This document shows, in pieces, positions 2,601 to 30,419 of a DNA stretch of 64,000 bases. The stretch comes from Mizuhopecten yessoensis (Eukaryota). Below the pieces are notes generated by a model. That model was not told where the DNA came from and did no database searches. It saw only the letters and a list, made by a program, of their open reading frames with translations. The stretch covers positions 718,890 to 782,889 of the forward strand of contig NW_018408906.1 in assembly GCF_002113885.1 (NCBI RefSeq), given 5' to 3'. Positions within the stretch are counted from its first letter, which is position 1; every line of letters begins with the position of its first letter. The position numbers and the translations under genes were made by a program.

Positions 2601-2844
2601 TTCAAAAGAGAGTGAGGTTATTTCATAGGATACCTTTGCACTAGAGAAAACAATACATGTCAAGAGAAAAAGACTATTGTTTGATTTCAAAAGAGGATCA
2701 GATGAGATGCTGATATAATATGTTTTGGGGGTTTGATATATTTTTCCTATTTTCTAAATAAATCTTTCCATCATTCTTTTTTTAAAGACTGCTGAATAAA
2801 GGAGGGAGGTTGAAAGTTGAAATAAGATTGATCTCAGCTTTTTG

Positions 2845-3034
2845 TATTCCGTCTTTGCGTATTGCAGAGTTATCTGCTCTTGTGAGCAGGTATTGATTGT
2901 TACGTCATTGGTTTGTGTGAGAAAGTTACGTCTTTTTCCCAAAAATTGATGACGATACTCTCACAAACCAATGACGTATCAATCAATACCTGCTCACAAG
3001 AGCAGATAACTCTGCAATACGAAAAGACAGAATA
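2845..3034. mobile_element. Fold-back MITE (near-perfect ~190-bp palindrome)
   Basis: TATTCCGTCTTTGCGTATTGCAGAGTTATCTGCTCTTGTGAGCAGGTATTGATTG... pairs with ...CAATCAATACCTGCTCACAAGAGCAGATAACTCTGCAATACGAAAAGACAGAATA. Confidence 0.8.
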
Positions 3035-3276
3035 GTGACCTGGTCAATTTATCCCAATACTAGGTACTATATAGTGATGAAACTATTATGATTCTTGAAA
3101 GATTGCTTTTATGGAATTCATGTAAATATATGAAGAATTATTACCCATTGTATTTGTTTTAAAAATTGCATGTACATTGTACATACACCTTATGCATTTT
3201 TGTTAATACAGGTGCACCAATTCTCAAGGATCTCCTGACAGACACCAAATCACATTGAACACATACTTTGGTAACC

Positions 3277-10825: not shown

Positions 10826-11002
10826 AGTTTAAACATAAAAGGAGGGGATGCCAATTTAGGCCTTATTGTGGCCATCACCGATACGTTTTAGTTTTATTCA
10901 TATACATAGATAAACAACCATTCCGATATATGAAGGGATTAAGTGGGGGACCAAAATCACAAACGGCCTCTTTTTGACAAAACCCTTCATACCCTTTTCA
11001 AC

Positions 11003-11383
11003 TGTAGCGGAAATGGACTGGGTCGTTTGCCGCCGACCATGTTGCTTAATTGGTACGTAGATCGAGCGTCCGTCTAGAGTTTGGAAAGTCCCGGGTTTAG
11101 AACCTCGGTTTGGCCGTGTATTTTCCCGCTCCTATTACATTTGGTGTCTGTGACCAACCCTTGTTTCAAGTACTGGGTGAATACTTGATGAGGGGATACA
11201 CGAACCTGGGTTGTACAGTATATGGTTGTGTCTTCGAGGGCAAAGACTTAGAAAAAGGAAGGAGGAATGTAGCGGAATGGGACTGGGTCGTTCACCGGCG
11301 ACAAGGTTTGTAGCTCAATTGGTAGAGTGCACTTCTAGATCGGAGGGTCCTGGGTTCAAACCCCGGTCCAGCCGTGCCATTTA
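11003..11383 (+). mobile_element. Miniature LTR element (TRIM) with tRNA-like LTRs, Helenus-type
   Basis: LTR1 11003-11139 (TGTAGCGGAA...CTATTACA), PBS-like TGGTGTCTGTGACC within 11140-11155, PPT AGAAAAAGGAAGGAGGAA 11250-11267. LTR2 starts TGTAGCGGAA at 11268, contains GTAGCTCAATTGGTAGAG and GGTTCAAACCC, and appears 3'-truncated. Confidence 0.85.
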
Positions 11384-11932
11384 TTCATAAATGCCATGTT
11401 TTTCACACAAAGGCCAAACAATAGCTGCTTTTTTTTTTGTTTGGAGATGCCTCTGACTTCAAGATAGATTAGTCCACAATAAAAAACAAATGTACATCTA
11501 AATACTTACGTTTTTGGAATACAGTGAGTGTGCTGTAGAAAATGAATTTCGTCTGTCAGTGATTTGATCAAATTCAGAATTATCTTCAGTGCAATGATTA
11601 AAATAAATGGATGCCCATTAAAGTATGATATTCTTTTCCAGTTTTGACTGATATTTTGGCTAACATAATGGGATGTTAACCACCCCTTGACCAGGGATGT
11701 GTGGTACACATCCCTGCCTTGACACACACCTAACATATTTTTATTTTGGGCTGAGGTCCATATTTCTGTGAGTTAAATGCATACATGTACGAGAGCCTGT
11801 TTCGTCCAAAATGATAAAGAGTATGTTATCTGGACTATAGCACATATTTTAACTTGATACCATCTCATAAATTATAAATCGTTGGATCCAAATATTGTAG
11901 CGTAAAATCTCAAGCTACTTTCGCACATAGAG

Positions 11933-14156
11933 GAAGGAAGTGGAGAAATAAAGCAATACACAGGAGCGCACTTCCCAAATACCGTTTCCTTCGCAGAACG
12001 CGCCCCATTGGAGAGCGCTCCCAAAATACCATTACACTGTTCTACTCATCAGCGCATCGCGCCCCGGCGCTCAAGGCCTTCTAAAAACCTGCTGTCACCC
12101 AGGCATATAAACACCTTGTTATACTGCCACCAGAGTCTAATAATAATTGCAAAATGGTTTGACGATATACAGAGGGAAATATATAAAGGAATCGTTTGAT
12201 ATATTTAGTTTTTTTTTGACAAACCCTGCTTTTCATATAGATAAATCCCACATGTCTGATGAGTTTTGTTTTATATAACAAACTATTTACGCAAAATTCG
12301 AAACAATCACATCATCTCAACCAACTCCGTCAAAGCACAAAAGATGATTCCGCACTTTCACGGAGTTGGCCGGAAAGTTACGACGGGATTATAAATGGGC
12401 AGGTAACTGCACGTCATTCTCTATACAGGGAGATAACTCTGCGCAACAATAGTATGACGTAACGTCAATTGTTCAATATCCCCTTCACAACAAGCGGCTA
12501 GCTAAAACAACGACACGTATTTTCTCAGGATAAAACCATAGACGAGTATTTAAAGCACCATGAACAACAACAATAACAACCAGGTAAGGTACATTTTGAG
12601 CATAAAAAAAATATTGTTTTACATAATTATAATGTGATGAAATTGACAGATTATTTTAAGTTGAATAGAAATTAGATACTTTAATTTAAATGACATAATT
12701 TCCCTGATTTTGTGGTGAAATTGCTTTGTTATTTTTATGAATCAAGCATAATTATGATGTCATAATTCATCAATTTTATTTTTATAGCACTTGATCAAAT
12801 TATTTCTAAATGAATTGATCTTCTGCATGGTAAAATGTTTACCTAGCCGAGTTATCTGTTAATACCAGTCGTTTTGCATTTTATATCAGATTCTTGACGT
12901 ATTGGAAGGATGGCCAAGTGATGTGTACGGCTTTTTGAGGGGGACACGGCCAAACGGATTGAACTTGTGGGTTACTTTCATGTCGGAGGACAAGGTAAGC
13001 TTTAAAGTACACAACATGTCAATCCTAGCATCTAGAAATCCTTAAAATCAATCCGCTAACAGGGAAATGAAAATTATATATTTATCTCGACACCATTAAC
13101 TTATTTTTGTCTTTTTTAAAGTCCGCTCTAAACAATTATTAACTATTTAGTAACGTATTTTTTCCTTTATATAAGGTCGGACTGAACGATACAAACGACG
13201 AGAAACAATGCAGATTGCCTGACATCTGGGAGGAGGAACGGAATAAGACGGATGAGGAGCAAAAATGGGTTAATGAGGAGGAGGAAGGGATGAATGAGGA
13301 AGAGGAACATTACAACCCTTACATTCGGTTGTATGCCGACTGTGAAGATTGGGGGTATGGCGACGGGATGCCTGCGGCCTGGCGACAATAAATCGAGGTA
13401 CAGCCATTTCACAAACTATGAGCTGATGTCAGTTCTAATTTTCGTTTGTTCTCAGAAGATTTACTTAAAAAATATAACTGTGTAATTGTCTTTCTACATG
13501 TAAATATACACTTCTGAAATAATGCATATAGATGTGTAACACAAATGTTTTTATCTTTTTTTTCCATTTTTCATTTCAGTTCACAAAAACCTTATGAGAA
13601 GTCAATCGCGCTAGCGACAAATGAGATGCAGCATGTTGAATGCGGGGGCTGTCGGACCCGGAACCGCACCAGAATGAAAACACCGAACTGATGATTTCAC
13701 AAAGTAAAAAAAAAAGCCGTATAATTTTATCATAAGTCTGTAGTTCTTTCAAAGTTTGACAATGCCCATTGACTTAATATTATTAAACGAAGTATCATAC
13801 AGGCCCATATTCGTACATTCTGTGCTTGGCTTTGAAGGTTAGTTGGATCCAAGCGGAAGTGAACATTTAATAGAAACATATTTGTTTGTACAAAATCTGT
13901 TCATTCTGAGTGATAGTATTAAATTCAAATTTAATTGTATCAACAAAATTTGATATATCTATTTTGATTTTTGGTATATACATTTTTCATTTCAATTAGG
14001 TTCTTTGTCAAAACAATTCTTGTGACGTAGTGATGACAATTACTGCTTACTATTTATAAGCTATGTTGTACACATAATCTGATGTTTTTGTCAATAAAAT
14101 ATATCTAACATTTGTATGTGTTTGTTCTATCGCAACATATCGGCAAACTCCGTTAA
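11933..14156 (+). mobile_element. 2.2-kb transposase-less element carrying a spliced gene (left copy; inverted relative to 25766-28173)
   Basis: Colinear reverse-complement similarity to 25766-28173, from GAAGGAAG(T/G)...GAGAAATAAAGC through ...TATCG(C/T)AACATATC; ends at TTAA 14153-14156. Confidence 0.75.
12560..13391 (+). CDS. Small acidic protein of unknown function, 114 aa, 3 coding exons (left copy)
   Basis: join(12560..12583,12890..12994,13176..13391), phase-0 GT-AG introns: MNNNNNNQ-ILDVLEGWPSDVYGFLRGTRPNGLNLWVTFMSEDK-VGLNDTNDEKQCRLPDIWEEERNKTDEEQKWVNEEEEGMNEEEEHYNPYIRLYADCEDWGYGDGMPAAWRQ*. Splice sites and frame are shared with the second copy. Probable 3'UTR intron 13398-13579; AATAAA at 14093. 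Confidence 0.7.
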
Positions 14157-14215
14157 AGGACAGTCTCTGCTTTCTGTTTTCTATATCAGTTTCATTGACA
14201 TATAGACTGTAACCA

Positions 14216-15075
14216 TTTTAGCCCACCAGATCCCACTTGAACTAATTAAACTTATGAATGCAATTCTGAATATTGGGACGCGGCTTCACGGCTACGTTAG
14301 GCAGACGCCTGGCAAAATCCTTTAAAACATATGTTTGCAATCGGATCATTTCGCCCGTTTACGTCGCATGCTCACGGAAATGGCCGAGTGTGGTCCAACG
14401 GAATGTGAGTGCCGGAGAGATGCTTTTTTTCTCACCAGAACCTGCCTGCACGAAACATCTTAACTAAATTCTCAATGTGAATGTCAATGTGAATTTGTGC
14501 CGTGATGTGGCATTCGTCATCATTATTCGTATACCGAACGACCAAGAGACAGAGGGGGGTGATATTTGGCTACGCTGGGATGAAATTTGTTTAAACGAAT
14601 GACCTGGAGCTGCATTCAAAGTCACAGGGGTCAAAGTTGTTGTAACTTTCAAAGGACTTTTATTGACTAACCACGAGGCCAAGGTTGATGTTTCTAGGCT
14701 ATTCGTAAGCTGTCAAGTGCCAATGACTTCCTGTACATATCTAAGATACCTGATGTCCTGATGTGATGCTATATTTGACTATAAGTATACTGGAATGAAG
14801 GGTTACCAATTTGTTCAAATGAATGACCTTGACCTACTTTCAAGGTTTTCCGAATAACTAAGAGGCAAGTTCTTGATATTCATTATTTAGCATGAAATGG
14901 TGGAAAGCGATACGAAACGAGGGATATCATTTGAAAATCAGATTAAGAAAAATAAGATGAAATCTTTCAATGAAGATTCATTAGGTGAAATTATGATATT
15001 CAGCCTTTTTAAACATAACAACGTAGCCATCTCTGAAGGTTACAGCTGTTAAATCAATGACAGGTGAGCAAGACA
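14216..15075 (+). mobile_element. Degenerate Helentron-like (HINE-type) element with satellite units
   Basis: Starts ttttagcccacca, contains gaccttgacctactttcaagg / tcaaagtcacaggggtcaaa units, ends near caggtgagc. Confidence 0.5.
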
Positions 15076-15334
15076 ACAACAATTCCGATATTTTGTGGCC
15101 GACTTTCAGACAGGTATAAAACGGTATATATTTTTGTTGAAATACCGCATGGCACACTTTAACTTAAGGGGCTGCGTAATTAAGGCGTCTGACCATCTAG
15201 TAGCATTAGCCCGCCACAATAGAAACAAACGATTCTATATATTGTCCCATTTTCCTTCAGAATGACCTACCAAACCTAATTCAATATTAATATTTCAAAA
15301 ATATACCATTATACAAAAAATTGTCCTCTGACCA

Positions 15335-16125
15335 CCAGGTCTCAAGCCTATACTGGTGGAGGAAGTCCCCGCCAAGCACATAAGGGGTCATAATCTCTTT
15401 ATTTCTCATTATATCTTATGATATTTACCATTTTTCTTCAGAATAACATAATAAAAGATATAAAACATAAATATTTCACACACACACACCATAATAGCAA
15501 AAATGTATATCTTGCCACAATAGCAACTCCTAACACCAAGAGTTGTCCGCCTTTCCCGATAACTTATAGGCAGTCTTCAAGGAATCACCAGACAAAAACT
15601 GTCATAATTTTTTTATTTCTCATGATGTCTTGTTGATATTTGCCAGTTTTCTTCATTATAACATACTCAAAAAAATACTATATTAATATTTCATATATAT
15701 ATCATTATAAAAAAAAAAACAGTTCGCTGACCACCATGACAACTTACTGTATGTCTCAAGCCTTTACTGGTGGGGAAGTCCCCTCCAAGTAAATATTGGG
15801 GCATACTTTCTTCATTTCTCATGATATCTTGATGATATTTTCCAGTTATCTTCAGAATAACATAATAAAGGATATAAAACATTAATATTTCACATATATA
15901 CCATTATAATCAAAAATTATATCCGATCACCATACCACATTATAACACTATAATACAATAGCAATACAATTTCATTTTCATATAGTGCATATTTCTTCAG
16001 AATTACATTTTAAAGGATATGAGATATCAACATTGCATAAATATATCATTCTATAAAATGTTCAATCTGCACACGATTCCTACCTATGGCTCAAGTCTAA
16101 CTCTGGCGGGGATTCACCCGCCAGG
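15335..16125. repeat. Degenerate tandem duplication (~400-bp period)
   Basis: tctcaagcc..tactggtgg(a)ggaagtcccc.ccaag...cttcagaataacataataaa.gatataaaacat occurs at ~15340 and ~15754, with a partial copy at ~16090. Confidence 0.6.
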
Positions 16126-16128
16126 TTA

Positions 16129-16755
16129 AGCCCCTGTCACACCTAGCCGCGTTGCCACTGCGATTGCACGGCGTTGTTAAAGTTCGCAGAGCGCCGTGAG
16201 ATCGCAGGAAAAATTGATATTTTTCATGAAGATGGCAATGTTACGGCGTTCTCACGGCGACCTTTACGTTTCAACGGAGCTCCATGGCGTTCTACCGCGT
16301 TCCTACGGAGATCTAGTTGGCAATTGTCTGCGCTCTCATGGCGCCCTCATGGCGCTTCCACTGCGTGCATCGAGTTTTCACGGCGCGTATAAGCGCGGTA
16401 GAGACACAGTGTCATCTCAAAGAACGCCGTGCAAGCGCCACCTTTAACCATTGCGTTCGCATTGCGACCTCTGTGCGCGCCCGCGGCGATCCTGTGGCGT
16501 TATAGGAGACCTAACTGCGCTGCTACGGCGACCTCACAGCGATCCCACTGCCCTCTTATCAGAACGCCGAGCGACGGCGTTTGTTTTCGGGATGCTCAAA
16601 GTGCGCGCCGTCGCTCGGCGTTCTATGCGATCCAACCGCGTTCACTGGCGATGCCACTGCGTTGCCGCGGCGATGCTTGCGATTCCACTGCGCGCAGATC
16701 GGCGTTCTGGATTTCTCTTGCACGCCGTGGGAACGCGGCCCTAGTGTGGGAGTGA
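16129..16755. mobile_element. GC-rich MITE, PIF/Harbinger-like termini
   Basis: Sharp GC-rich island; AGCCCCTGTCACACCTAGCCGCGTTGCCAC at the left end pairs with GTGGGAACGCGGCCCTAGTGTG(GG)AG at the right end; left flank TTA. Confidence 0.7.
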
Positions 16756-17586
16756 TGACCAGATATTGAAAAAAAATCAAACTCAGAGTAAGTAAACCAA
16801 GTGTTAATATTTCGTTATATTTGCATAAGGAGAGTAGTTCCTGAAATTTCATGAAGATATCTCAACCAAAACAGATTTTATGAGGAAAAAGCTAAATAAA
16901 AGCACCCGTAATCTCCTGTGACCTATTTCTGAAGGTCCTAAGAAGGATTTTTTTTTATTATTTCTTAACTAATCTCAAATTTGAACTTATTCTTCTGAGC
17001 CAAGTTTTATCTCATTTGAGTGATAAATAAAAAAAATAGGCCGAATAAGATATGACATTTAGTAAATGTCCTTACAGTAATCTGGTGATCTCTATTTTAA
17101 AGTTTAAAGTGCTAATTAGAAATATCTAAAGAATGATGTGATCTCAACTTCACTTTGTCTGCTGACAATTATGTTCCAAAATGTATTAATCCAGAGTGTT
17201 ATGTATCTTTGGTAAGGTGGTATTCGAATTCGAAAATGAGTTCAAACTGAGTAGACAAGGTCTGTGTCCTGAATTTTATACCTTCAGTTATTATGAGAAC
17301 TAATCAAGAAAGTGTTCTGATGGTACCCTGAAGGGTTAACTTAAACACCTATTTCTAGTCTTACCTGTACTATAATTACCCATATCCTGCCAATTAGAGC
17401 GAATAGAATTTACCTGAGTTATTTCATCGAGTATATCACACCTTACCTGAACGATAATTACTCATATCCTGTCAAGAGCGACTACGGATTTTACCTGGAT
17501 TATATCACGGAAAATAACACACATAACCTGTACGATAATTACACATATTTAGTTTCTTTTTTCTCTCTCAAAAATTCAAACTCAGA

Positions 17587-18168
17587 TTTTCGACTTTGGT
17601 TGAATTATTTGTACAAAATAAAATAAAGTTTTACACCCTATGACGACATATAGCGGCACAGTATAAAAATTATGGAGGCCCGCTATGATATTTTAGGGAA
17701 AATACATCACACCTGACATAATAAATTGATGTTGTGGCTGTATTTATAATTCTATCTCTCTTTATTGATAGTAAATATGTTTGGGAATATATTAGCTATT
17801 ATATAAACCATAAAAAACATAATATGTACATTTTTGTAGTCAGAATGAGAAAAATATCAAGGCACGGTACGAGTATTTCTGAATTTGCCGATATGGTTAT
17901 ATATAATATTCGTTCATAACGATACATTTCGAAAATAAACTTCGTTATTACATCAATTTTCGACGTTGGTTGAATTATTTGTACAAAATAAACTAATGTT
18001 TAACACCCTAGGACGACATATAACGGCACAGTTTAAAAAACATACGGAGGCCCGCTATGATATTTTCGGGAAAATAGTCACACCTGACGTAATAAATTAA
18101 TGTTGTGGCTGTATTGGTAATTCTATCTCTCTTTATTGAAAGTAAATATGTTTGGGACAATATTAGAT
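17587..18168 (+). repeat. ~370-bp repeat array upstream of the env-like gene (about 1.6 units)
   Basis: Unit ttttcgac.ttggttgaattatttgtac...acacccta.gacgacatata.cggcacag...ggaggcccgctatgatattt...tcacacctgac starts at ~17587 and ~17956. Confidence 0.85.
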
Positions 18169-19764
18169 TATTTTCCTGTATTTACCTGTTCACCAATAGG
18201 AAATACTGTGTTAGTTATAGGAATATTTAACAAATATATTTCCTGATTTTTCGTAATATTTACTAGAATTATGAATCAATATATACAATATTCAAGTTAT
18301 TACTTAATAAAAACACATCAAAATACATTAACTGAAAATCTGCTTTTATTAATTTCATATAAAATCAATTTTATAAATTTTTATTATGCATTTACATGTA
18401 TGTTATATATAGATTTCATAAAATAGAACTAAATTTAGCTAGAAATGTATGACAAATAAAATCAGTAAAGACAGAGATCATGTATTATATTAATAAATAT
18501 GCAATAACAGATGCAAAGCTAGGAATGAAAATAAATAAAACGAATTAATTACATGTACACATGGAATACTCAGCGCTGGTTGATCAATTCAATCATATTC
18601 ATAAAATACACACATGCACAAAGATACATGATATAAAACTAATATAATAGCACTAACTTACTAAAGGTGAAATATTGGAAAGTCAATAAAAATCACAGAT
18701 AAGTCCATGATTTTAAGAAATCCTAGCAAAGCACCAAATAAAAATTCTATAACAAGCACATTTATCACAATGTCACTCTAAATGCAAAAGATTGGTTGTA
18801 TATATTTGTGGATTTCACGTTACTGTTTTGTATGATCTAGCTGATGAAAATGGTATATGATATGAAAAAAATGTCTAAAAATGATGAAAATAGACTATAT
18901 AAAAGCTACATGTATATGACAGGACTGTATATATGATAGAGATAATGTGGGAGAACACAGGTAAAAACCAGGTAAAATATATATGAAACAAACTATAACT
19001 GCTATCACAACATTACTGCCTCTATGTTTTTTTTAAAAAAAAGTGGGAGAAAGGAGAACACACCGATGACACCTTATCTCCTGTTCCATACGCCCGAGGG
19101 GTCTCTTTGAGTTTCTCTGAAGAAAGTTGTACTGTTTTAATCGCCTGAAGCGTGAAACTGTCGGAAACACCCGCCTTAAACCTGTGCTATTATCACAATT
19201 ATTTCACGTGACAGTTGACATGGGATTAACGCTTCTCAATAGAGGATTAACTCTATCATTACTATAAAATCCGGGGCAGAATCGTTTCAAATCAGTTCGT
19301 TCTTCGATTCGAAAGCGAATACAACTCTTTGTTGCATTGAATTTTCTTTGCGAGTTTTGCATACCTATTTGCGAATTTATCCATCTTCGTACATAAACAA
19401 AACTGTTCAAGGTAAGAAATATTTCAATAATATCTTATTAAGGTTGACAGACATGTAGTGGAAATATTTAAAGGAAGCTAGTTCAGAGTTCATGAACAGC
19501 AGACAATTCTTGCCTAGCAATTCAGCAACTGACTTCTAATGAGAAGCGTAAATTATTATGAAATTGTCCTGACAAAATAAGTTATTTAAATGTTTTGTGG
19601 ATTTCGTCATAGGGTATTAACATAGATTTTAATAGGTCATATAGTCTATTGATTCTTATAATGTATATAAGATACAAGTTAAAGGAACGGAAAACATCAT
19701 ATGAATGTTAAATTGATAATTTACCATGGCCACCATTAATCACATCAAACAATTCTATTTTCAG

Positions 19765-22176
19765 ATGATATCATACATCACAGTACTTTTCTTGATAGGA
19801 TTGGCAGCTGGCGATAGTGATCTTAAGCGGACAAACGCTGGCGTGATTTTTAAATCACGAGGAACAATTCAGAGTTCGTCCAGCGTTTGGTACCATACCT
19901 TCGCATTAGATCTGCCGACACTGCCAAACAAATGGCTGCATTACCAAATGGCGGATCCTGGTATGCCTCCAATGAAGTGTACAGGAAACCCGGGTGACAG
20001 TGAATGCAGCATGTCAGCAATGTCGATGTCAAATTTCATTATTTCATTGAATGCAGAGGTATGTATTTTTAGCAAATTATTTTGTAACTTGTGTTTTCGG
20101 TTTTTTTGGTAAAATAAAATAAAGTCAAACCTGTATTAAGAGGCCACCCAAGGGACCGGCAGAAATTGGCCGCTTAAGACAGGTGTCTGCTAAAACCAGG
20201 CTCACCCGAATATCACAACCAAGTTTTCATACATCCACGGGTTATAATGACATTTTCCCGGCAATATAGCCTGCTATGTTATTTTGATTTTTTCTCCCTT
20301 CATCAACAGGGGTACGATTTCATACTTGAATATAAATGTATAATCAATAAAATACAAAGGCGTTTTGGTGATTAATTTCCTAAAATGATAAATTTATTTT
20401 TGTTTGGCTACACAGGTGTTCCACATACGTTTTGCGCTAGCAGACAACACCAGTACTGAAATCTACATGTATTTATTAGCAAATTATTTTATAACTTATT
20501 GTTCCGTTTTTGGTAAAATAAAGTATTTTCTTACCTTAGTATTAAACAAACAATAATTTACTCGTTATTGACTTTTATAGGTTGTAAAGACGTTTGATCA
20601 TTTATTGGACCTGACCAGAACTCTCATCCCAAAACATGTATCACCAGATCAAAAGAGAAGAAAATGGTTTGCCCCACTCTCAATTATTGGTTCGAGTTCG
20701 AAAACAATATTTGGAACAGCAACCGTAGAAGATGTTGAGACGGTTTCTTCCAATATCAACGAATTGATCAGATGACAGAGACTTACTGCTAAGACCATGG
20801 TTGCCCACGAAAGGAATTTCCAGTCATTTGTTAAGTTGTCTAGTTCACCTTTTAATGGGTTAAAGAAGAAAGTTTCTGATAATCACGAGGCTCTTAAAAT
20901 GATAAAGAATCTTGAAATAAATAATACTGACACCATCAACCGGGGAATAGATTTACTTGAAATTGCAATGTTTCAGATGAATAGAACAAATTCCATCATT
21001 CACCACCTTCGCGATATTGGGCAAGCTATTGAACAACTGGTACAAGGTTATCTCTCACCTTTACTCGTTTCAGGGAAAGCCATCAGAAGTGTCGTCAAAG
21101 AGATCAACGACAAGATCATCGACATGACGAATACAAAAGATCACGGTGTACTTTCTGACTACGGTTTTGGTCATCATAACTCTTTTTTTTGTCAATTGCA
21201 AGGAAATACAATATTGATTACTCTTAAACTTCAGGTAGTACCATTGTTAGGAAAGACACATCTCTACCAGGTAATGGTGTATCCAGTTCCAACAACCAAA
21301 CAAAGTAGACATGCAACAAAGATAGCAGGTCTTCCAGAGTATGTTATAATTTCTGACGATTACGGAGGTAGGAGGTATTCACCAATTACACCTGTTCAAT
21401 TGTCTAACTGCAGAGGGATTCATCATGTGGTATGTCCATTTAATTTAGTTTACACAACAGTTTTAAAGGAAAACTGTCTTACATCCCTCATTAAAGATTC
21501 TTCAGATAAAATAGCAAAGTTTTGTGATTTTAGGTACTTCCGTGACCATCTGGAGCCGTCCATAGAGCCGATATCGGACAACAGCTTTTCGGTGTATGAT
21601 ATCCCCAGGCTCTCACTGAATATAAGAGGACATACCGAAGATGTCGAAGGCTGCCATCTTTGTATTATTACCATACCATGCCATGCCAGAATCGAGACTT
21701 ATGACATGACCAGTGACAGAGTGCTTTCCCAGAAATGCAATAGCGAGGAGACCGAAGTGACACGCGATCATCTTGTAAACTTGGCGATGGTAAAGGCATT
21801 CATTGCAGAAAACAATCAGCTTGGATTTACAGCATCATCTGTCTTCAGTAAAGCACAGGATGTTAAAGTACCCAAATTTGACTTTTTCGAACACCGCTAT
21901 CATGAATTCCTTACGACCGACCAGAAAACGAACCTTAAGCTGAACAAGATGGTAGAAGCATCAAAAAGACAGGAAAAAATATTTCAAAATATTGCAGAAC
22001 CCTTTATCAAAGCTAGTGAAGAAAACGCCACTTGGTTAACCTCGAGTCTTTCCGTTGGAGATATTGTGGTAATAATATGCCTTATTGTTGGGACAGTGGT
22101 TTTCATACGACTTATTTTTATTGTGAAGAGATTGGGAGCAATTATTGCTGTTAGTACAAAAGGCGAAGAAGCATAA
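19765..22176 (+). pseudogene. Intron-containing envelope/fusion glycoprotein gene (Gypsy/errantivirus Env, baculovirus F-like), ~629 codons, one in-frame TGA
   Basis: join(19765..20058,20581..22176), phase-0 GT-AG intron. Signal peptide MISYITVLFLIGLAAG; basic site KRRK(W) followed by fusion-peptide-like FAPLSIIGSSSKTIFGTATVEDV; heptad-rich region; Cys-rich ectodomain (GCHLCIITIPC); TM IVVIICLIVGTVVFIRLIFIV. TGA at 20773-20775. Probable 5'UTR intron 19412-19764. Confidence 0.8.
20123..20200 (+). mobile_element. Tc1/pogo-like MITE end inside the env intron
   Basis: agtcaaacctgtattaagaggccacc...ggccgcttaagacaggt lies between two copies of a ~60-bp duplicated intron segment (~20061 and ~20468). 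Confidence 0.5.
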
Positions 22177-22476
22177 TGAGAATCTACAAAATTAGACTCT
22201 ACCATTCATGGCATGATAAAGTCTGGAGAACAATATGAAAATCTAGAACAAAAGATCAAGACGATAACTAATATATGTACACATATTATACAGAAACTGA
22301 GGCATTCTAACCAAGGAACACTAATGAAGACTAGGAAAAGAGTAAGATTTTAGTTATTGAACCAGTTATAGGCTCTTTTGTTCAGAAATATAAACCTGAT
22401 TATACTATAAACAATAAAAAACAGATAGCTGACCAAATAAAAAGAATTTTATCTAAATATTAACCCACAAAGGATG

Positions 22477-23505
22477 AGTCACACCTGACGTAATTAATTA
22501 ATGTTGTGGCTGTATTTATAATTCTATTTTTCTTTACTGATAGTAGATATGTTCGGAAATATATGAGCTATTATATAAACAATATAAAATCATTATATGT
22601 GTATTTTTGTAGTCAGAATGAGAAAAAAGTCAAGTCACGGTACAAGTATTTCTGAATTTGCCGCTACATTTATATATAATATTCGTTGATAACGGTAGAT
22701 TATGAAAATAAACTTTATTATAACATTTTTCAACCTATGTTAAAGTTTTGTACAAAAAAAATAATGTTTAACACCCTAGGACGAAATATAGCAGCACAGT
22801 CATAAAAATAAGGAGGCCCGCTATGATATTTTCGGAAAAATACATCACACCTGACGTAATAAACTAATGTTGTGGCCGAATTGATAATTCTATCTCTCTT
22901 TATTGATAGTAAATATATTTGGGAATATATTAACTATTATATAAACAATACAAAAAACATTATGTGTGTATTTTTATAGTCAGAATGGTAGAGAAATAAA
23001 GGGACGGTACGATTGTATTTTAAATTTTCCGACATGTTTTTATATAGTATTGGTTTATAACAATTAATTATGGAATACAAGTTTAATATAATTTCACAAT
23101 ATGACCCTGATTCAAGTATTAACTTTAATAGTAATTATTAAGAAAACTATTGACCTTTACACTTCCACATCCCCGGGGGGTGTAACTATCAGAATGAGAG
23201 AAAAAAATCAAGGCACGGTACGAGTATTTCTGAATTTGCCGGTTATATGTAATATTCGTTCATAACGATAAATTATGAAATTAAACTCGTTATAATATCA
23301 TTTTTCGACTTTGGTTGAATTATTTGTACAACATAAACTAATGTTCAATACCCTAGGTCGTCATATAGCGGCACAGTTTAAAAACTACGGAGCCCCACTA
23401 TGATATTTTCGAAAAAATACATCACACCTGACGAAATTAATTAATGTTTTGGCTGTATTGGTAATTCTATCACTATTTATTGATAGTAAATATGTTTGGG
23501 AATAT
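22477..23505 (+). repeat. ~370-bp repeat array downstream of the env-like gene (about 2.5 units, same orientation as 17587-18168)
   Basis: tcacacctgacg.aa...gtggctgtatt...aattctat...gatagtaaatatgtttgggaatat units at ~22478, ~22845 and ~23422. Confidence 0.85.
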
Positions 23506-25765
23506 GTCATTTTTGAGTTGTAAGTGAACTTTGATAAATGAAAAAACAAATCAGGACCTGGAACTCACTTCAGCCACAGGTGTTGAGCAAATATTATATG
23601 ATATATATAATATACAATACTAATAATTGATATCTTATACATGTACTTATAGCATATAAAGGGTGTCATTCACCTTTTAATTCACTTAAAATTGAGAGAT
23701 ATTTGAAAAAGCCAAGCTTGAGATGTGTCCAGAAGCCATAACTCATAACAAAAGGAAAGTGTATAGTCAATATGCAATTTATGCAAGTCTACTTAAATGA
23801 GTGAAGTTGTAAATTTCAAGTCAAAATATTATTTAGAAAGGAAATTATTGAGGAAACAAATTACTTTTCAACTGAAAATGACCGAAAAGACCCCCCTGAC
23901 TTATTCCTTCGTTTTATATAAACAATCTTTAAGTGACGATTGAATTTCTGTCATTTTTCATTCTGTTACATATGCTTGTTTATTTATACATGTTTTCAAA
24001 AACAGAAATGGCATTATTTAGGTTTTTAAGCTCATTTTGAAAACAGCAAACTTTCGGTCATATTTGTTCATTTCATTTGAATAGACGTTATGAATCGTAA
24101 TATGGGCATAAGGTAAAGAAGTGGGACCTTGACTTTTATTTATGATACTAGACACTCAGTCTTGGTTAATTACAATAGCTCAATACAATGAAATAAACAT
24201 GAAATTTAATTAATTTCTGGTTCAAGTAAACATTAAATAATTTTTCTGATGATCATCAATTTTTAGATTTTTCGTCTTGAAATTTGGATCACACATTAGC
24301 GACTTGCGAAGTCGCTGATATGTGATCGATTTTTAGGGACTGAAATGTACATGTCTAAAATAGCATGTAAAATGCGGAATTATAACAGTTTCAACATAAC
24401 ATTACACACAACGTTTGTTTACATCAAGGACATCACAAACATACCAAAGGGAGACGTATACAACGTAAATTATTTTTTTTATCTTATTAAAGTTATTTTA
24501 GTCCTAAAATGTTGATCACATATAAGCGTCTTGTAATATGGGCATAAGGTAAAGAAGTGGGACCTTGACGTTACTTATTTATGATACTAAATACTCAGTC
24601 TTGGTTAATTATGCTCGTGCCCCACCCCACACATTATAATAAATATTTTCATATCCCTCTTTAAAGGTCGTTTTCGATTTCCTTCTTACCTGCCAACTGG
24701 TAAATTTGACTTTTTGATCATATATTTCTGTTTACTATATTAATGCACGGAAGTAATGTCGTTTCTCGACTGTTAGTGAGTGCAATTGGTTGTCTGAGAC
24801 CCGGGTCACATAACAAACAACGTATATATACCTCCCTTTTAGAACATAAACACTTGCAATAAGTACTCTTTTATAATAAAGAAAATTATTTGTATATATT
24901 CCTTTCTGGTAAAGAAGATAATACTGTAAAGGTTTTTCATAAATCATACATTATAAGCCTTCTTGGCCCCTTTTTATCGCCCTCCCACGACACATAAAAA
25001 CTAATGTGTGAAATCTATACGAAGTTACAGCGACTGGCGTAGATGGGCTTCTTCAACAACATCACCATCATCATCATCATCATCATCATCAATCATCATC
25101 ACTAGCGGTTCATTCTTTCTTAGTCGTTAGACGAGAAAAACTGTTGGTAAGTGTGTTAAGAAATTGTTTGCATTGAACTCATGTACGACGTAATAATAAT
25201 AATAATATACAACATTTATATAGCGCCCTGTATAATTTGTAAAATTACTCTAAAGCGCTTTACAACATATGGATAATAGTAATGGTTATAATTGTGAGGG
25301 CGGGGTAGGGGGGTCGCAGTTGAGCGGTACGGCTGAAATAGCGCTTTATTCTCAGCCATGTTCTCTATTACACGCGTCACGACTCGAATAGGAGTTACGT
25401 CCCTTTGTACACTCGGTAATGCTTGTATGCTAGTTATTACTCAGCTTGTTATTTTAAATGTGTATTTGAGTCAGACCATTCATTGTTACTCTGTTAATTA
25501 ACAGCTATTTGAGAGAGATTACTCATTGTAATAGACCATACTAGTTAGTAGCTAACTAACGCGATCATTATTACTTAATTGTCACATCTCCACGTAGATA
25601 ATTTAGAGCAAGGCAGTTCGGTCATATGCTATGTAGTTTTCTCTATGTAATGATCAATGTTCATCATGATAATAGTTCTAGATACTGTCATATCTCTATA
25701 TGTTTGTAGTTGGGAATTAGTTAAGATAACACTCACTGTGCACTCTGCCAAAAGTTCCGATTTTA

Positions 25766-28173
25766 TTAAGGAAGACATCTCCCGCCAGATATGTTACGAT
25801 AAACCAAAATAGGGAAGGTAGATCAAGAACAAACACATACAAATGTTATATATATTTTATTGACAAAAAAAATCAGATTATGTGAACAACATATAGCTTA
25901 TAAAAAGTAAGCAATAAGTGTCATCATTACGTCACGAGAACTGTTTTGACAAAGAACCTAATTGAAATGAAAAAAATATACCAAAAGTCAAAATAGATAT
26001 ATCAAATTATATATTTATACAACTAAATTTGAATTTAATACTATTTTGATGCATTTCAATCGCTCAAAAAGAACAGATTTTGTACAAACAAACAGATATT
26101 TTTCTATAAAATGTTCACTTCCGCATGCATCCAACTTAACCTTCAAAGCCAAGGATAGAATGTACGAATAGTGTCCCTTTTGATACTTCGTTTAATAATA
26201 TCAAAGTCAATAGTGCAATGTCAAACTTTGAAAGAACTACAGACTTATGTTCAAATTATACGTCTTTTTTTTTACTTTGTGAAAACATCAGTTCGGCGAT
26301 TTTCATTCTGGGGCGGTTCCGGGTCCGACAGCCCCCGCATTCAACATGTTGCATCTCATTTGTCGCTAGCGAGATCGACTTCTCATAAGGTTTTTGTGAA
26401 CTGAAATGAAAAAGGAAAAGAAAAATACCAGATTAAATCCATGCGTTACACATCTATTACATGTAGAAATAATACGCTGTAATATTTTAAAAGTAAATCT
26501 TCGGAGAACAAACGAAAATTTGAGAAGAATTGAAATCAGCTCATAATAACTACTAAACGCTTTCATGTATCTTGAATTCATGTATGTGAAATTACCTAAT
26601 TTAAGTTTACCTCGATTTATTGCCTCCATGTCTCTGGCATACCGTCACCATATCCCCAATCTTCACAGTCGGCATACAACCGGAGGTACGGGTTGTAATG
26701 TTCCTCCTCCTCATTCACACACTTCTGCTCCTCATCTGTCTCATTCTGTTCCTCCTCCTCATTCACCCACTTCTGCTTCTCATCTGTCTCATTCTGCTCC
26801 TCCTCATTCACCCATTTCTGCTCCTCATCTATTTCATTCTGTTCCCTCTCCCAGATGTCAGGCAATCTGCTTTGTTTCTCGTCGTTTGTATCGTTCAGTC
26901 CGACCTTAAATGAAAGAAAAAAAATACGTTACTAAATAGCAGATTTAACTTTTAGTGCGGACATAAGAAAAAGACAATGATAAGTTTATTTTATCGGAAA
27001 AACAAAATATAGTATCGAGATAATTATGACATTTTTATTTCCGTGTTAGCGGATTGATTTAAAGGATTTCATTATGCTTATTAAGATTGACATTTTGTGT
27101 AGTATAAACATTACCCTGTCCTCCAACATGAAAGTGACCCACAAGTTCAATCCATTTGGCCGTGTCCCCCTCAAAAATCCGTACACATCACTTGGCCATC
27201 CTTCCAATACGTCAAGAATCTGATATAAAATACAAAGTAGCTATAATCAAACACTCAGTTAGGGGGACCTTTTCATCTTAACCACGCATCAGATAAATTC
27301 AATGTAGAAATAATTTGTGCATGTGTATTTGAAATAAAATTATAACTTTAAATTAAGACATCGTATGCCTGGTTCTTAAAATTAACAAGAGAAGTTCACC
27401 GCAAAATCAGGAAAATTATTTTACTAATTAATTTATCTCTATTCTATTCAAATTAAAATAGTCTTTCAAATTTCTCCACCATATAGAGAAGAAACATTCT
27501 AATTCCAAAAAAAATATCTTACCTGGTTGTTATTGTTGTTGTCCATGGTGCTTTAAATACTCGTCTATGGTTTTATCCTGAGAAAATACGTGTCGTTTTG
27601 TTTTAGCTAGCCGCTTGTTGTGAAGGGGATATTGAACAATTGACGTTACGTCATAATATTGCCACACAGAGTTATGTCCCTGTATAGAGTATGAGGTGCA
27701 GTTACCTGCCCATTTATAATCCCGTCGTAACTTTCCGGCCAACTCCATGAAAGTGCGGAATCATCTTTTGTGCTTTGACGGACTTGGTTGAGATGATGTG
27801 ATTGTTTCGAATTCTGCGTAAATAGTTTGTTATATAAAACAAAACTCATCAGACATGTGGGATTTATCTATATGAAAAACAGGATTTGTCAAAAAACCTA
27901 AATATATCAAACGATTCCTTTATATATTTCCCTCTGTATATCGTCAAACCATTTTGCAATTATTATTAGACTCTGGTGGCAGCATAACAAGGTGTTTATA
28001 TGCCTGGGCGAAATCAGCTTTTTAGAAGGCTTTGAGCGCCGGGGCGCGACGCGCTAATGAGTAGTACAGTGTAATGGTATTTTGGGAGCGCTCTCCAATG
28101 GGGCGCGTTCTGCGAAGGAAATGGTATTTGGGAAGTGCGCTCCTGTGTATCGCTTTATTTCTCAACTTCCTTC
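25766..28173 (-). mobile_element. 2.4-kb transposase-less element carrying a spliced gene (right copy)
   Basis: Reverse complement of 11933-14156. Its own ends on the + strand are TTAA-GGAAG (25766-25774) and CTTCC-TTCA (28166-28174), i.e. a 5-bp mini-TIR in a TTAA-like context. Confidence 0.75.
26617..27546 (-). CDS. Small acidic protein of unknown function, 138 aa, 3 coding exons (right copy)
   Basis: complement(join(26617..26904,27115..27219,27523..27546)): MDNNNNNQ-ILDVLEGWPSDVYGFLRGTRPNGLNLWVTFMLEDR-VGLNDTNDEKQSRLPDIWERE(QNExDExQKxVNEEE[E])x3-HYNPYLRLYADCEDWGYGDGMPETWRQ*. Confidence 0.7.
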
Positions 28174-28720
28174 AAGGTGTTTACAGGTGTCTCCGTGTCC
28201 GAGTCATCTGAATCTTCATCTTTAGCACAATGTACACGAAGACGGAGTCGCCTATAAAATCTCTCCATATCCTGAATTAATACCGCATTGTTGGGATTTC
28301 TGGGGGTAGGACAGAAATTGAGACCTTTAGAGAGGAGCGAGTTCTCTTGTTCTGAAAGGTTGTGGCCGGAAAGGTTTACTACTGTGTTGTTGACTGCTTT
28401 GTTAGTAGATTTATGTTTGGTGCGCCGTCTCCTCTTACGGGGTTTACGATTAGTGGGAGTCGCGTTGGAATTTCTTTGTTCGTTTCTCATGCAGAGAGGC
28501 ACGTCTTTTGTTCTCGAAGTGTTTTATCTTTTGTAGGAGTGTCGTTGTTTCATTTTCCGATGTTGTGGACTTTAAGTTATTAAGACCTGACGCCAGCTTC
28601 TTACGTGCAATACTGAGTTTCTTGTTACATACTCCCTGTAGCAGTGCAAAAATGATTCATCCGACAGACAGGCACTGTCTCCTCAAAGCGATTAGTGGCC
28701 GACTTTGACATAGAGCCAAT
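28174..28720 (-). mobile_element. Penelope-like retroelement, N-terminal fragment truncated at the right-copy element
   Basis: Basic KPRKRRRRTK then VVNLSGHNLSEQENSLLSKGLNFCPTP...DMERFYRRLRLR, the motif that precedes the RT in Penelope-like ORFs. Confidence 0.8.
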
Positions 28721-30419
28721 AGAGCCAATATAAGGCGAGCACTTAGATTTTAAGCCTTTGTGTACAATATCTGCCTGCAGTTACGAGCAATGATACTTTT
28801 AATATTTTAAATTACACCAGGTTGCTGTTCACCACTGGATGTCGGAATACTAAGGGGTCGGCATAGAAAGTTTTCATTTTATGCAATTAATTTAGTGTGT
28901 GTTGAATACCTCAGTGACATGTACAGTCCTCGACACGTGTCCATATCCAAAATTACTCCAACCAGTTTATCCTCCCATAATGCAGTAATGTAATGTACTC
29001 CCCTATATATTTTACCCCCAACAACACTTTACAATCCTTTTGCATCTCTTTCCCTTCTTCCTCCTCCATCCTCTTCTCTCCTATATACTTATATCTATAT
29101 GCAAAATATTCGTCAGTGCCGTCCAATCGCTGTTTTACAAAAAAGGAGACGGATTAACATAAGTACTTTGTACTTGTTTTCGAATCCTATATGTATATCA
29201 TGTTTGCATTACTGGAAATTTATATTGATAATAAAATAAAGTTTAAACTAATATTTCGTTTAGTATTTTACTACATGGCTGGTTCATTAAATTTGTTTCA
29301 AGACTAACTCAATTCATCACCCCATGAAATCGACCAAAGCAAGATTCAAGTATAATTTGAGCGCGCTTTCTCTCTCTCGGGCTTCAATCAAAACTCCCGG
29401 ATTATTTTGGTATATGCATGTAACTTTGCGGACTTAATCAATCTGTGCTTTATAACGAACATTTCATGGTTAAGATATCAAAAGTCATACTAATGCGACT
29501 ACAGTTATTTGATCACATGTTCTTTTACTTCTTAACCTTTACCTTCAAGTTCAACTCGGTCTTTGTCTAAATCGGCTGTACTTGTCATATTTAAATCGTG
29601 CGTCAAACCTGAAACGCAATGACGTCAAAGTTATGTTCCACTATTGTGACGTCAAAGTCATGTTCCACTATTGTGCGTCGATATATTTTACAACCAATTC
29701 GTTCAGTGTTGATGTAATTTTTTACATTTGTGCAATTATCAACCTTTTTGTATTTCTAATTTGATGTAATCGTTCCCGTAAATGTATATTTGTACAGTGT
29801 TGTTTGGCCCTATACGACTGGCATTGCCAATGGTCCGTGAAACAATACAAAAATCTAAAGACAAAATAAAAGCAAATCTGTTAATATTTTGTCGTTGTTG
29901 TCTACAAATAACTATGTATGTGCTATTGCTAGACATCCTTGAACTCCCACTAACAGTATTTTCCTCCGATTTATCTATTATTAAAATAATATGTTACTTG
30001 AATATAATTTGAATATGTAATTTGTATTTGGAATTACAGTAAGTGACGAAATATTTTATCACCGCTGTTTCTTTTTTTGTTTTGTACTTTTTTATATTTT
30101 TTTCCATAAAAATGCAAATATATCATGCATAAACATTATTCCTCTCACACATTACAATTCATTCATTAAATATTCATTTATAATAAACTGCATATTTCCA
30201 GGTATAATTAATTATGTTTATGCATAATTAAATTACAGCTAAATTATGTCTGTTATATAAAAGCATTGTTTAGAAGTGATAGAAAGGTCCTAGAGGTATA
30301 ATAGGGAATGTAAGACTAAGAGAGAGAAGAAAAAAATGAGGGGGNNNNNNNNNNNNNNNNNNNNNNNNNNNNNNNNNNTCGATAGTTATATGTTCATATT
30401 TTGGCAAAGACAGGGTTTA

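What the first reader, a model, noticed from the sequence alone, without database searches (positions are those of the whole stretch)
11933..14156. Transposase-less repeated element whose only content is a spliced gene apparently under purifying selection
Seen: both copies keep the ATG, every splice site, phase-0 introns, the stop, a 3'UTR intron starting 6 nt after the stop, and AATAAA just inside the element end. Exons and the ~630-bp 5' region are very similar, while introns are visibly much more diverged. Exon 2 differs by 3 synonymous changes (GGC/GGA, AAC/AAT, GTT/GTC) and 2 non-synonymous ones. The C-terminal HYNPY(I/L)RLYADCEDWGYGDGMPxxWRQ block differs mostly synonymously (CCT/CCG, GGG/GGA, GGC/GGT, GGG/GGT, CCT/CCA, CGA/AGG). 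The ORF track misses this gene because it is spliced. Established: TTAA-bounded DNA elements include piggyBac and Kolobok, and some transposons carry accessory genes. Inference: a mobile one-gene cassette whose 114-138 aa acidic, Trp/Tyr-rich product is selected. Possible roles (anti-silencing factor, nucleic-acid mimic, helper-transposase modulator) are speculation. I recognise no domain in it.
Basis: partly seen in the sequence, partly recalled or inferred. Interest (0 to 1): 0.8.

Follow-up and report, generated by a model that had tools for sequence, protein, structure and literature searches.

The report
Duplicated scallop-only gene, not a transposon
The two repeated copies are an inverted pair of ordinary, already annotated scallop genes from a small scallop-only family of acidic proteins. 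The protein is kept by selection, but nothing shows that the unit is a mobile element.

Summary
Copy A (11933-14128, +) and copy B (28173-25826, -) share an intact gene with three coding exons, phase-0 introns, an intron 6 nt after the stop, and AATAAA. The 5' region and exons 1-2 are about 95-96% identical; introns are 73-82%. The window is Mizuhopecten yessoensis. Both copies are annotated genes (114 and 138 aa).

Purifying selection is real: dN/dS for A-B is 0.17 (p = 1e-6), and 0.1-0.3 for other informative pairs.

The mobile-element reading fails:
- There are no terminal inverted repeats and no target-site duplication.
- The "TTAA" lies inside sequence homologous to other paralogs, where it reads TCAA or TAAA.
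- Four further M. yessoensis copies (one a pseudogene) have different homology limits.
- One pair lies inside a duplication of at least 6 kb.
- Pecten maximus and Argopecten irradians carry genes with the same exon structure and a strongly conserved promoter core.

An exhaustive profile search of 1.84 billion protein representatives found only scallop members. There is no Pfam or PDB relative, and the AlphaFold model is unreliable.

Best reading: a scallop-restricted orphan gene family that grew by tandem, segmental and inverted duplication, with some gene conversion between paralogs. The near-identity of the A/B-specific distal 5' region remains unexplained. Protein function is unknown.

The parts
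11933..14128 (+). Copy A: the whole segment shared with copy B. It is gene LOC110466992 (114 aa) with its upstream region.
11933..12295 (+). Distal 5' region found only in A and B, about 96% identical between them. It is CpG-rich (about 11950-12090) and has a TATA-like CATATAAAC at 12104-12112. Its role is unexplained.
   Evidence: no ORF kept in both copies except a 67-aa one (12259-12462) whose differences all change residues; no Rfam hit
12296..12376 (+). Head of the ancestral unit, where homology to paralogs C and G begins. It holds a 15-nt inverted pair of the motif CAACTCCGTCAAAG (12321-12335 / 12355-12369).
12377..12510 (+). Promoter core conserved in all paralogs and in Pecten and Argopecten. 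It has two (A/G)GATAAC GATA-type sites, the first changed to GGTAAC in A and B, and a palindromic TGACGTAACGTCA ATF/CREB-type site.
12560..12583 (+). Coding exon 1 (8 codons, MNNNNNNQ)
12890..12994 (+). Coding exon 2 (35 codons), holding the conserved motif WPxDV(Y/F)GFLRGxRxxGLNLWVTF
13176..13391 (+). Coding exon 3 with the stop: an acidic repeat linker followed by the conserved C-terminal aromatic motif
13398..13579 (+). Intron starting 6 nt after the stop. It lies 6 nt after the stop in paralogs B, C, F and G, and a GT donor sits at the same offset in Pecten maximus. In paralog E the stop is lost and this intron is coding.
13580..14128 (+). 3'UTR exon with AATAAA at 14093-14098. Its first ~130 nt are conserved among paralogs.
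14128..14161 (+). Tail motif homologous to the head of the unit (12305-12339).
25826..28173 (-). Copy B: an inverted paralog (138 aa, annotated 'LAS1L-like', a name with no domain support). CDS exons are 27546-27523, 27219-27115 and 26904-26617. The 72-nt in-frame repeat insertion is 26727-26798. The intron after the stop is 26610-26401. AATAAA is 25861-25856.

Best explanation
A and B are an inverted (tail-to-tail) pair of paralogous host genes in the Yesso scallop, 11.7 kb apart. They belong to a small gene family found only in scallops.

Each copy is a complete transcription unit:
- a promoter core with GATA-type and ATF/CREB-type sites,
- three phase-0 coding exons,
- an intron just behind the stop codon,
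- a polyadenylation signal.

The product is a ~100-140 aa acidic protein (pI about 4.1-4.3) with no signal peptide or membrane segment. Two short conserved aromatic motifs are joined by an expandable acidic linker.

Shown: the family grew by ordinary DNA-level duplication. There is a tandem pair F-G, a segmental duplicate of at least 6 kb (C-F), and the inverted pair A-B.

Inferred: descent from a tandem array, because the sequence just after the poly(A) site matches the sequence at the head of the unit. Paralogs have also exchanged short tracts by gene conversion.

Shown: purifying selection on the protein and on the proximal promoter explains why those parts look alike while introns have drifted.

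Inferred with low confidence: the protein acts as a small intracellular binding or adaptor protein through its two motifs.
For: - Organism and annotation: both copies match M. yessoensis proteins exactly, on scaffold NEDP02005579.1.
- Other M. yessoensis copies: C, F and E are intact, and G is a tandem pseudogene with an in-frame TAG in exon 2.
- Pecten maximus and Argopecten irradians have genes with the same three phase-0 coding exons.
- dN/dS is 0.17 for A-B (dS 0.37, Fisher p = 1.4e-6) and 0.1-0.3 for the other informative pairs. The young C-F pair (0.47, p = 0.38) is uninformative.
- The promoter core is 77-88% identical across genera, higher than the coding exons.
- C-F are 93-100% identical uniformly across exons, introns and flanks over at least 6 kb.
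- No TIR or TSD; the TTAA is not conserved.
- Head/tail motif: local-alignment z = 5-6, and 9 motif hits against 0.6 expected.
- Conversion: at the end of the CDS, B groups with G while A groups with C and F, although A and B are sisters elsewhere.
- The protein tree puts all M. yessoensis copies in one clade with support 94/96, just under the tool's 95 mark.
- No signal peptide or TM segment; pI 4.1-4.3.
Against: - No transcript data could be consulted. Splicing rests on conserved splice sites and on public gene models that equal the spliced model.
- The 5' breakpoint of the A-B homology is sharp (96% identity falling to random at 11933/28173).
- The family sits on three scaffolds, so some dispersal mechanism acted. 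I cannot name it.
- The A/B-only distal 5' region (11933-12295) is 96% identical. The adjoining segment 12296-12393 is 98% identical between A and B but only 55-64% identical to G and C. Simple constraint fits this poorly. It points to a recent conversion or a secondary event that I cannot prove.
- Protein function is not established. The AF2 model has pLDDT 45.
Confidence: 0.85

Rival explanations
1. One reading: a non-autonomous, TTAA-targeting DNA transposon (piggyBac or Kolobok type) whose only cargo is this gene, moved in trans by a transposase encoded elsewhere.
For: A-B homology is gene-sized with a sharp 5' edge. Copies lie on three scaffolds. A TTAA lies 24 nt past the end of A.
Against: - No terminal inverted repeats.
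- The flanks of A and B show no duplicated target, and B has no TTAA at the matching position.
- The TTAA of A aligns to TCAA in G and the C fragment and to TAAA in C, so it is internal homologous sequence.
- Paralogs C, F, G and E start and end at other points.
- The gene, with its promoter, is present in two other genera.
Confidence: 0.02
2. A and B are the long inverted terminal arms of one large composite element (11933-28173) whose interior carries the 459-aa glycoprotein-like ORF.
For: The arms are inverted. The outer edges are sharper than the inner ones. An intronless 459-aa ORF with a C-terminal hydrophobic segment lies between them.
Against: - No target-site duplication outside 11933 and 28173.
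- The arms are only 80% identical overall, and each is a complete selected gene with orthologue-like genes elsewhere.
- C, E, F and G show no such partner arm within 10 kb.
- The ORF has its own flanking direct-repeat arrays (17563-18188 and 22479-23553), so it looks like an independent insertion.
Confidence: 0.02
3. The uneven identity is caused only by gene conversion between the two inverted copies. Under this view the gene is not under selection and may be decaying.
For: Conversion does occur in the family. The distal 5' region looks homogenised.
Against: - Synonymous sites have diverged (dS 0.37) while non-synonymous sites have not (dN 0.064).
- The same ratio holds for paralogs on other scaffolds and for other genera, where conversion cannot act.
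- Identity drops within a few bases of each splice site.
Confidence: 0.03
4. The unit disperses as a cassette by a non-canonical route. Examples would be circles excised from a tandem array, or an unknown enzyme acting on the CAACTCCGTCAAAG head/tail motif and its hairpin.
For: About 34 nt at the head (12305-12339) recur at the tail (14128-14161) in A, G and C. The head motif forms an inverted pair. The copies sit at three sites with unrelated neighbours.
Against: - A remnant of the next unit of a tandem array explains the head/tail repeat with no new mechanism.
- The motif was not found in the Pecten and Argopecten loci.
- B lacks the tail motif.
- C-F shows plain segmental duplication.
Confidence: 0.06

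Closest known systems
Taxonomically restricted (orphan) gene families expanded by tandem or segmental duplication in bivalve genomes
   Same: - No homologue outside one family of animals.
- A small, fast-evolving, low-complexity protein.
- Several clustered and dispersed paralogs, including a pseudogene.
- dN/dS below 1.
   Different: - The promoter core is more conserved than the coding sequence across genera.
- An intron sits 6 nt after the stop.
- No expression or function data exist for this family: two literature searches by identifier returned nothing.
piggyBac / Kolobok TTAA-specific DNA transposons and their non-autonomous derivatives (features recalled from my own knowledge of these families)
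   Same: Only the size range, and one TTAA near one end of one copy.
   Different: No TIRs, no TTAA duplication, no shared termini among copies, and no transposase in the sampled DNA.
Gene-carrying non-autonomous elements (Pack-MULEs, Helitron gene captures; from my own knowledge)
   Same: A repeated unit whose content is host-like coding sequence.
   Different: Those elements usually carry gene fragments between element termini. Here the unit is a full gene with its own conserved promoter, all introns and a poly(A) signal. It has no element termini. The ends read GAAGG...GTTCT, not the Helitron TC...CTRR.
Inverted duplicate gene pairs (small palindromes) that undergo arm-to-arm gene conversion
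   Same: Two inverted arms a few kb long on one chromosome, with mosaic similarity that suggests conversion.
   Different: The arms are far from identical (introns 73-82%). At least one conversion-like tract links B to a paralog on another scaffold rather than to its partner arm.

Membership tests
TTAA-specific DNA transposon (piggyBac/Kolobok type), non-autonomous | TTAA target-site duplication directly flanking both ends of each copy | tested here: not met
   No TTAA lies at 11933 or 28173. The TTAA at 14152-14155 is 24 nt past the homology end, occurs only in A, and aligns to TCAA or TAAA in paralogs.
TTAA-specific DNA transposon (piggyBac/Kolobok type), non-autonomous | Terminal inverted repeats | tested here: not met
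   The inverted-repeat scan of 11700-14400 finds no pair at the two ends. The ends read GAAGGAAGTGG... and ...GTGTTTGTTCT.
TTAA-specific DNA transposon (piggyBac/Kolobok type), non-autonomous | Independent copies share the same two termini | tested here: not met
   Homology of A to C and G starts at about 12296-12301, to F at 12377 and to E at 12410. At the 3' side it runs past 14128 after an indel.
TTAA-specific DNA transposon (piggyBac/Kolobok type), non-autonomous | An autonomous relative with the same ends that encodes a transposase | not testable with these tools
   No scallop whole-genome search is available. None is present in the 168 kb sampled (window plus five loci).
Processed retrocopy | Loss of introns, a poly(A) tract and a target-site duplication | tested here: not met
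   All three introns are retained in both copies.
Helitron gene capture | 5'-TC and 3'-CTRR ends with a subterminal 3' hairpin | tested here: not met
   The ends are GAAGG... and ...GTTCT, with no 3' hairpin.
Host gene family expanded by segmental duplication | Related genes with the same exon-intron structure in related species | tested here: met
   The Pecten maximus and Argopecten irradians genes have three phase-0 coding exons with an 8-codon first exon.
Host gene family expanded by segmental duplication | Purifying selection on the coding sequence | tested here: met
   Nei-Gojobori dN/dS is 0.10-0.34 for informative pairs. For A-B it is 0.17 with p = 1.4e-6.
Host gene family expanded by segmental duplication | Duplications not confined to one fixed unit | tested here: met
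   C-F homology spans L001 6819-12969, including the remnant of a neighbouring copy. F-G are in tandem, and A-B are inverted with extra upstream sequence.
Host gene family expanded by segmental duplication | Transcription and splicing as modelled | not testable with these tools
   No RNA-seq is available. The public gene models equal the spliced model.

The most novel reading that the evidence does not exclude
The gene unit is a self-contained cassette that disperses by a non-canonical route. Candidates are circular intermediates from a tandem array, or an unknown recombinase that recognises the CAACTCCGTCAAAG head hairpin and tail motif. That would account for copies on three scaffolds with unrelated neighbours. 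On this reading, the near-identical A/B-specific 5' region would be a newly acquired upstream promoter or exon.
Probability: 0.05. Interest if true: 0.65.

Novelty: new member of a known kind. Interest (0 to 1): 0.2.

Why it matters
As found, it matters little beyond scallop genomics. It removes a false transposon call. It also defines an undescribed scallop-only family: at least five intact genes and one pseudogene in M. yessoensis, and at least one gene each in P. maximus and A. irradians. Two RefSeq names in the family, "LAS1L-like" and "gem-associated protein 2-like", are misleading. The family is a tidy case for studying how an orphan gene with a highly conserved GATA/ATF-type promoter expands and is partly homogenised by gene conversion.

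Tried and rejected
- Pfam scans of the exons and of the full database proteins gave no domain above threshold. The only hit at all was a sub-threshold DUF4746 match (16 bits against a cut-off of 27) on the acidic repeats of B.
- A PDB sequence-profile search gave 0 hits at E up to 10.
- Rfam on the unit (E up to 1) and on the whole window gave 0 hits.
- AlphaFold2 with the 6-sequence alignment gave pLDDT 45 and pTM 0.29. I therefore ran no fold search, because matches to such a model are meaningless.
- Two literature searches by gene, protein and UniProt identifiers returned 0 papers. A topical search gave nothing relevant.
- A conserved structure in the 3'UTR was tested and found no compensatory pairs.
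- The 67-aa ORF in the 5' region is kept in both copies, but all of its differences change residues, so I rejected it as coding.
- The TE-like ORF beside copy B could not be identified: no Pfam hit and no other copy in the sampled DNA.
- A word search with the 459-aa ORF found only itself.
- I considered that A-B similarity in the proximal promoter is only conversion. I rejected this because the same core is conserved across genera.

Full report
**What is there.**
A blastn of 11001-15000 against the window finds one other copy. 11933-14128 (+) matches 28173-25826 (-) at 80% over 2.4 kb, E = 0. The pairwise alignment and the per-segment count give these identities:
- 5' region (627 bp): 95.8%
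- exon 1: 95.8%
- intron 1: 73.1%
- exon 2: 95.2%
- intron 2: 81.2%
- exon 3 CDS: 87.0%, plus a 72-nt in-frame insertion in B (26727-26798)
- intron 3: 82.5%
- 3'UTR exon: 92.1%
- flanks: about 40%

The ATG, all GT/AG sites, the phase-0 introns, the stop, the intron 6 nt after the stop and AATAAA (14093-14098 in A, 25861-25856 in B) are kept in both copies. The only factual correction concerns the 3' limit. It is 14128, not 14156, and the TTAA at 14152-14155 is present only in A.

**How I searched.**
I searched the spliced model exon by exon, by reference. The full-length proteins used later (P0001-P0008) are the ones the databases returned. dN/dS was counted exon by exon and the counts were summed. 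The N stretches (30345-30378, 37441-37894, 53132) were left alone.

**Identity of the genes.**
The exon-3 peptide of B finds, at 100% identity, a 138-aa Mizuhopecten yessoensis protein named "ribosomal biogenesis protein LAS1L-like". It also finds the 114-aa protein of LOC110466992, which is copy A, and a third paralog. Both database proteins equal the spliced models. The window is scaffold NEDP02005579.1 of GCA_002113885.2. A lies between a WD40 gene and an uncharacterised 459-aa gene. The "LAS1L-like" name has no domain support.

**The family.**
A profile word search and cluster look-ups add four members:
- C (P0003) and F (P0007, named "gem-associated protein 2-like") on scaffold NEDP02004769.1
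- E (P0006) on NEDP02003775.1
- D (P0005) in Argopecten irradians

DNA comparison reveals G, an unannotated copy 4.5 kb downstream of F in tandem. It has intact splice sites but an in-frame TAG in exon 2.

Because the claim of restriction rests on absence, I ran the exhaustive profile search of 1.84 billion representatives. It returned only two clusters, the M. yessoensis one and P0008 of Pecten maximus. That search has no length window, so longer fusions would also have been seen.

All intact genes have an 8-codon exon 1 and two further phase-0 coding exons. In E the stop is lost, and the intron that elsewhere follows the stop has become a coding, phase-2 intron. In P. maximus a GT donor also lies 6 nt after the stop. 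A protein tree puts the five intact M. yessoensis copies in one clade with support 94/96, just under the tool's 95 mark. This fits a lineage-specific expansion, or concerted evolution.

**Selection.**
Nei-Gojobori estimates for A-B are dS 0.37, dN 0.064 and dN/dS 0.17 (Fisher p = 1.4e-6). A-C gives 0.12, B-C 0.16 and A-E 0.16. Comparisons with P. maximus give about 0.08-0.22, although dS there is near saturation. The young pair C-F (dS 0.05) is uninformative. Intron divergence for A-B (pooled 0.22, Jukes-Cantor 0.26) is of the order of dS.

**Why it is not a transposon.**
1. No terminal inverted repeats occur at the ends, and the flanks of A and B carry no duplicated target.
2. The sequence just past 14128 is still homologous among paralogs once an indel is allowed. 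The A string CCGTTAAAG corresponds to CCGTCAAAG in G and the C fragment, and to CCGTAAAAG in C. The TTAA is a substitution inside shared sequence, not a target site.
3. The ends are not shared. A matches C and G from about 12296-12301, F from 12377 and E only from 12410. None has 11933-12295.
4. C and F are 93-100% identical uniformly across exons, introns and flanks over at least 6 kb. This stretch includes a remnant of a G-like neighbour in the C locus. That is plain segmental duplication.
5. The gene with its promoter is in two other genera. A core of about 130 bp (A 12377-12510) is 77-88% identical to Pecten and Argopecten, more than the coding exons at 72-76% (apart from an 86.5% exon-2 match between Pecten and Argopecten). 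It holds two (A/G)GATAAC sites and a palindromic TGACGTAACGTCA. Reading these as GATA-type and ATF/CREB-type sites rests on my own knowledge, not on a test.

**Origin of the unit.**
About 34 nt at the head of the ancestral unit (A 12305-12339) recur right after the poly(A) region (A 14128-14161). The same holds at the tails of G and C. Local alignments have z = 5-6 with 0 of 200 shuffles reaching the score. The 14-nt core occurs 9 times in 168 kb against 0.6 expected, always at heads or tails, and as an inverted pair both at the head of A/B and at the tail of G. The simplest reading is that the tail is the start of the next unit of an ancestral tandem array with a period of about 1.8 kb. This is inference.

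**Mosaic similarity.**
Sliding windows over an A/B/G/C/F alignment show A and B as each other's closest relatives over most of the unit. At 13299-13398, however, B is 94% identical to G and only 87% to A. In the last codons, A shares GCG GCC TGG CGA with C and F, while B and G share a GAG/AGG state at the same codons. Short conversion or recombination tracts between paralogs have therefore occurred.

**The unexplained part.**
The 5' region is far more alike than the introns (4.2% against 22% mismatches, p = 2e-22).
- For the proximal part this is constraint, because the same core is conserved across paralogs and genera.
- For the distal part it is not clear. 12296-12393 is 98% identical between A and B but only 55-64% identical to G and C, and 11933-12295 exists only in A and B.
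- This pattern fits a recent conversion or secondary event better than long-term constraint.
- The fall in identity right after the exon-1 donor site, however, would then be a coincidence.

The distal part is CpG-rich and has a TATA-like site (12104-12112). In A and B only, the first GATA site reads CAG|GTAAC (donor-like, GT at 12403), and a good acceptor-like site ends at 12528. An A/B-specific upstream promoter with a spliced 5'UTR exon is therefore possible. I cannot test it here.

**The protein.**
It is 101-138 aa long, with pI 4.1-4.3, 20-28% Asp plus Glu, and no hydrophobic N-terminus or membrane segment. Two blocks are conserved:
- WPxDV(Y/F)GFLRGxRxxGLNLWVTF
- YxPY(I/V)R(L/V)(Y/F)AD...DGMPxAW

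They are joined by an acidic linker whose repeat number varies: B has three 16-residue repeats. There is no Pfam, PDB or other relative. The AlphaFold model is unreliable (pLDDT 45). It suggests only a β-hairpin at 20-39, a helix in the linker and a strand at 92-97.

My best guess, with low confidence, is a small cytosolic or nuclear binding protein that works through the two motifs. The Y-x-x-L/V core after an acidic run resembles short linear interaction motifs. That is a lead recalled from memory, not a result.

**Verdict.**
The object is an inverted pair of paralogs from an undescribed scallop-only gene family, not a TTAA-bounded mobile cassette. Interest is low to modest.

Noticed in passing
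window 20797-22176 (+), with 19726-20112 upstream: An intronless 459-aa ORF (annotated LOC110467003) with a C-terminal hydrophobic segment and no Pfam domain lies between copies A and B. A 128-aa ORF with a signal-like N-terminus lies just upstream. Together they look like an envelope or fusion-glycoprotein-like gene of a mobile or viral element. The word search found only the ORF itself.
   Followed up: partly
window 17563-18188 and 22479-23553: Arrays of direct repeats (sub-periods of about 370 and 577 bp, 74-91% identical) flank the 459-aa ORF about 5 kb apart. They may be the terminal repeats of that insertion.
   Followed up: no
window 28155-28502 (-): A 115-aa ORF (containing ...LSKGLNFCPTP...) abuts copy B's 5' boundary and reads 19 nt into the shared region. 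It looks like a retroelement fragment, but it has no Pfam hit and no other copy in the sampled DNA. If it is a TE, the A/B-only distal 5' region might be that TE's tail.
   Followed up: partly
window 14583-14846; also 41099-41301, 46714-47070, 54232-54560; L004 16262-16668; L003 9290-9739: A short dispersed repeat (SINE- or MITE-like) is present in several copies in the window, at another M. yessoensis locus, and as a cluster upstream of the Argopecten gene. It is 68-90% identical.
   Followed up: no
window 2842-3037; L003 12743-12933 and 20156-20273: A sequence of about 190 nt matches the Argopecten locus in both orientations, so it is a palindromic, MITE-like repeat shared between genera.
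   Followed up: no
window 13580-13711 (A) and 26400-26268 (B); L005 11002-11135 and 15818-15921; L001 11855-11950: The first ~130 nt of the 3'UTR exon, including a GC-rich stretch, are 81-96% identical among paralogs. This is higher than most of the UTR, although the reading frame is not kept. RNAalifold found no compensatory pairs.
   Followed up: yes
L005 14792-15591: Copy G is an unannotated tandem paralog 4.5 kb downstream of F. Its splice sites are intact, but exon 2 has an in-frame TAG, so it is a pseudogene.
   Followed up: yes
L004 10873-11145: In paralog E the stop codon is lost. The reading frame runs through the intron that elsewhere follows the stop, adding 10 residues (YCKPSSKIPG).
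   Followed up: yes
L001 13608-20760: Paralog C lies next to two GIMAP/AIG1 GTPase genes, which are immune-associated in other animals. This is a weak hint about context only.
   Followed up: no
window 37399-37960: Overlapping ORFs in several frames on both strands surround the 454-nt N stretch. This is probably low-complexity or repeat sequence. I did not examine it, and the N stretch was left alone.
   Followed up: no
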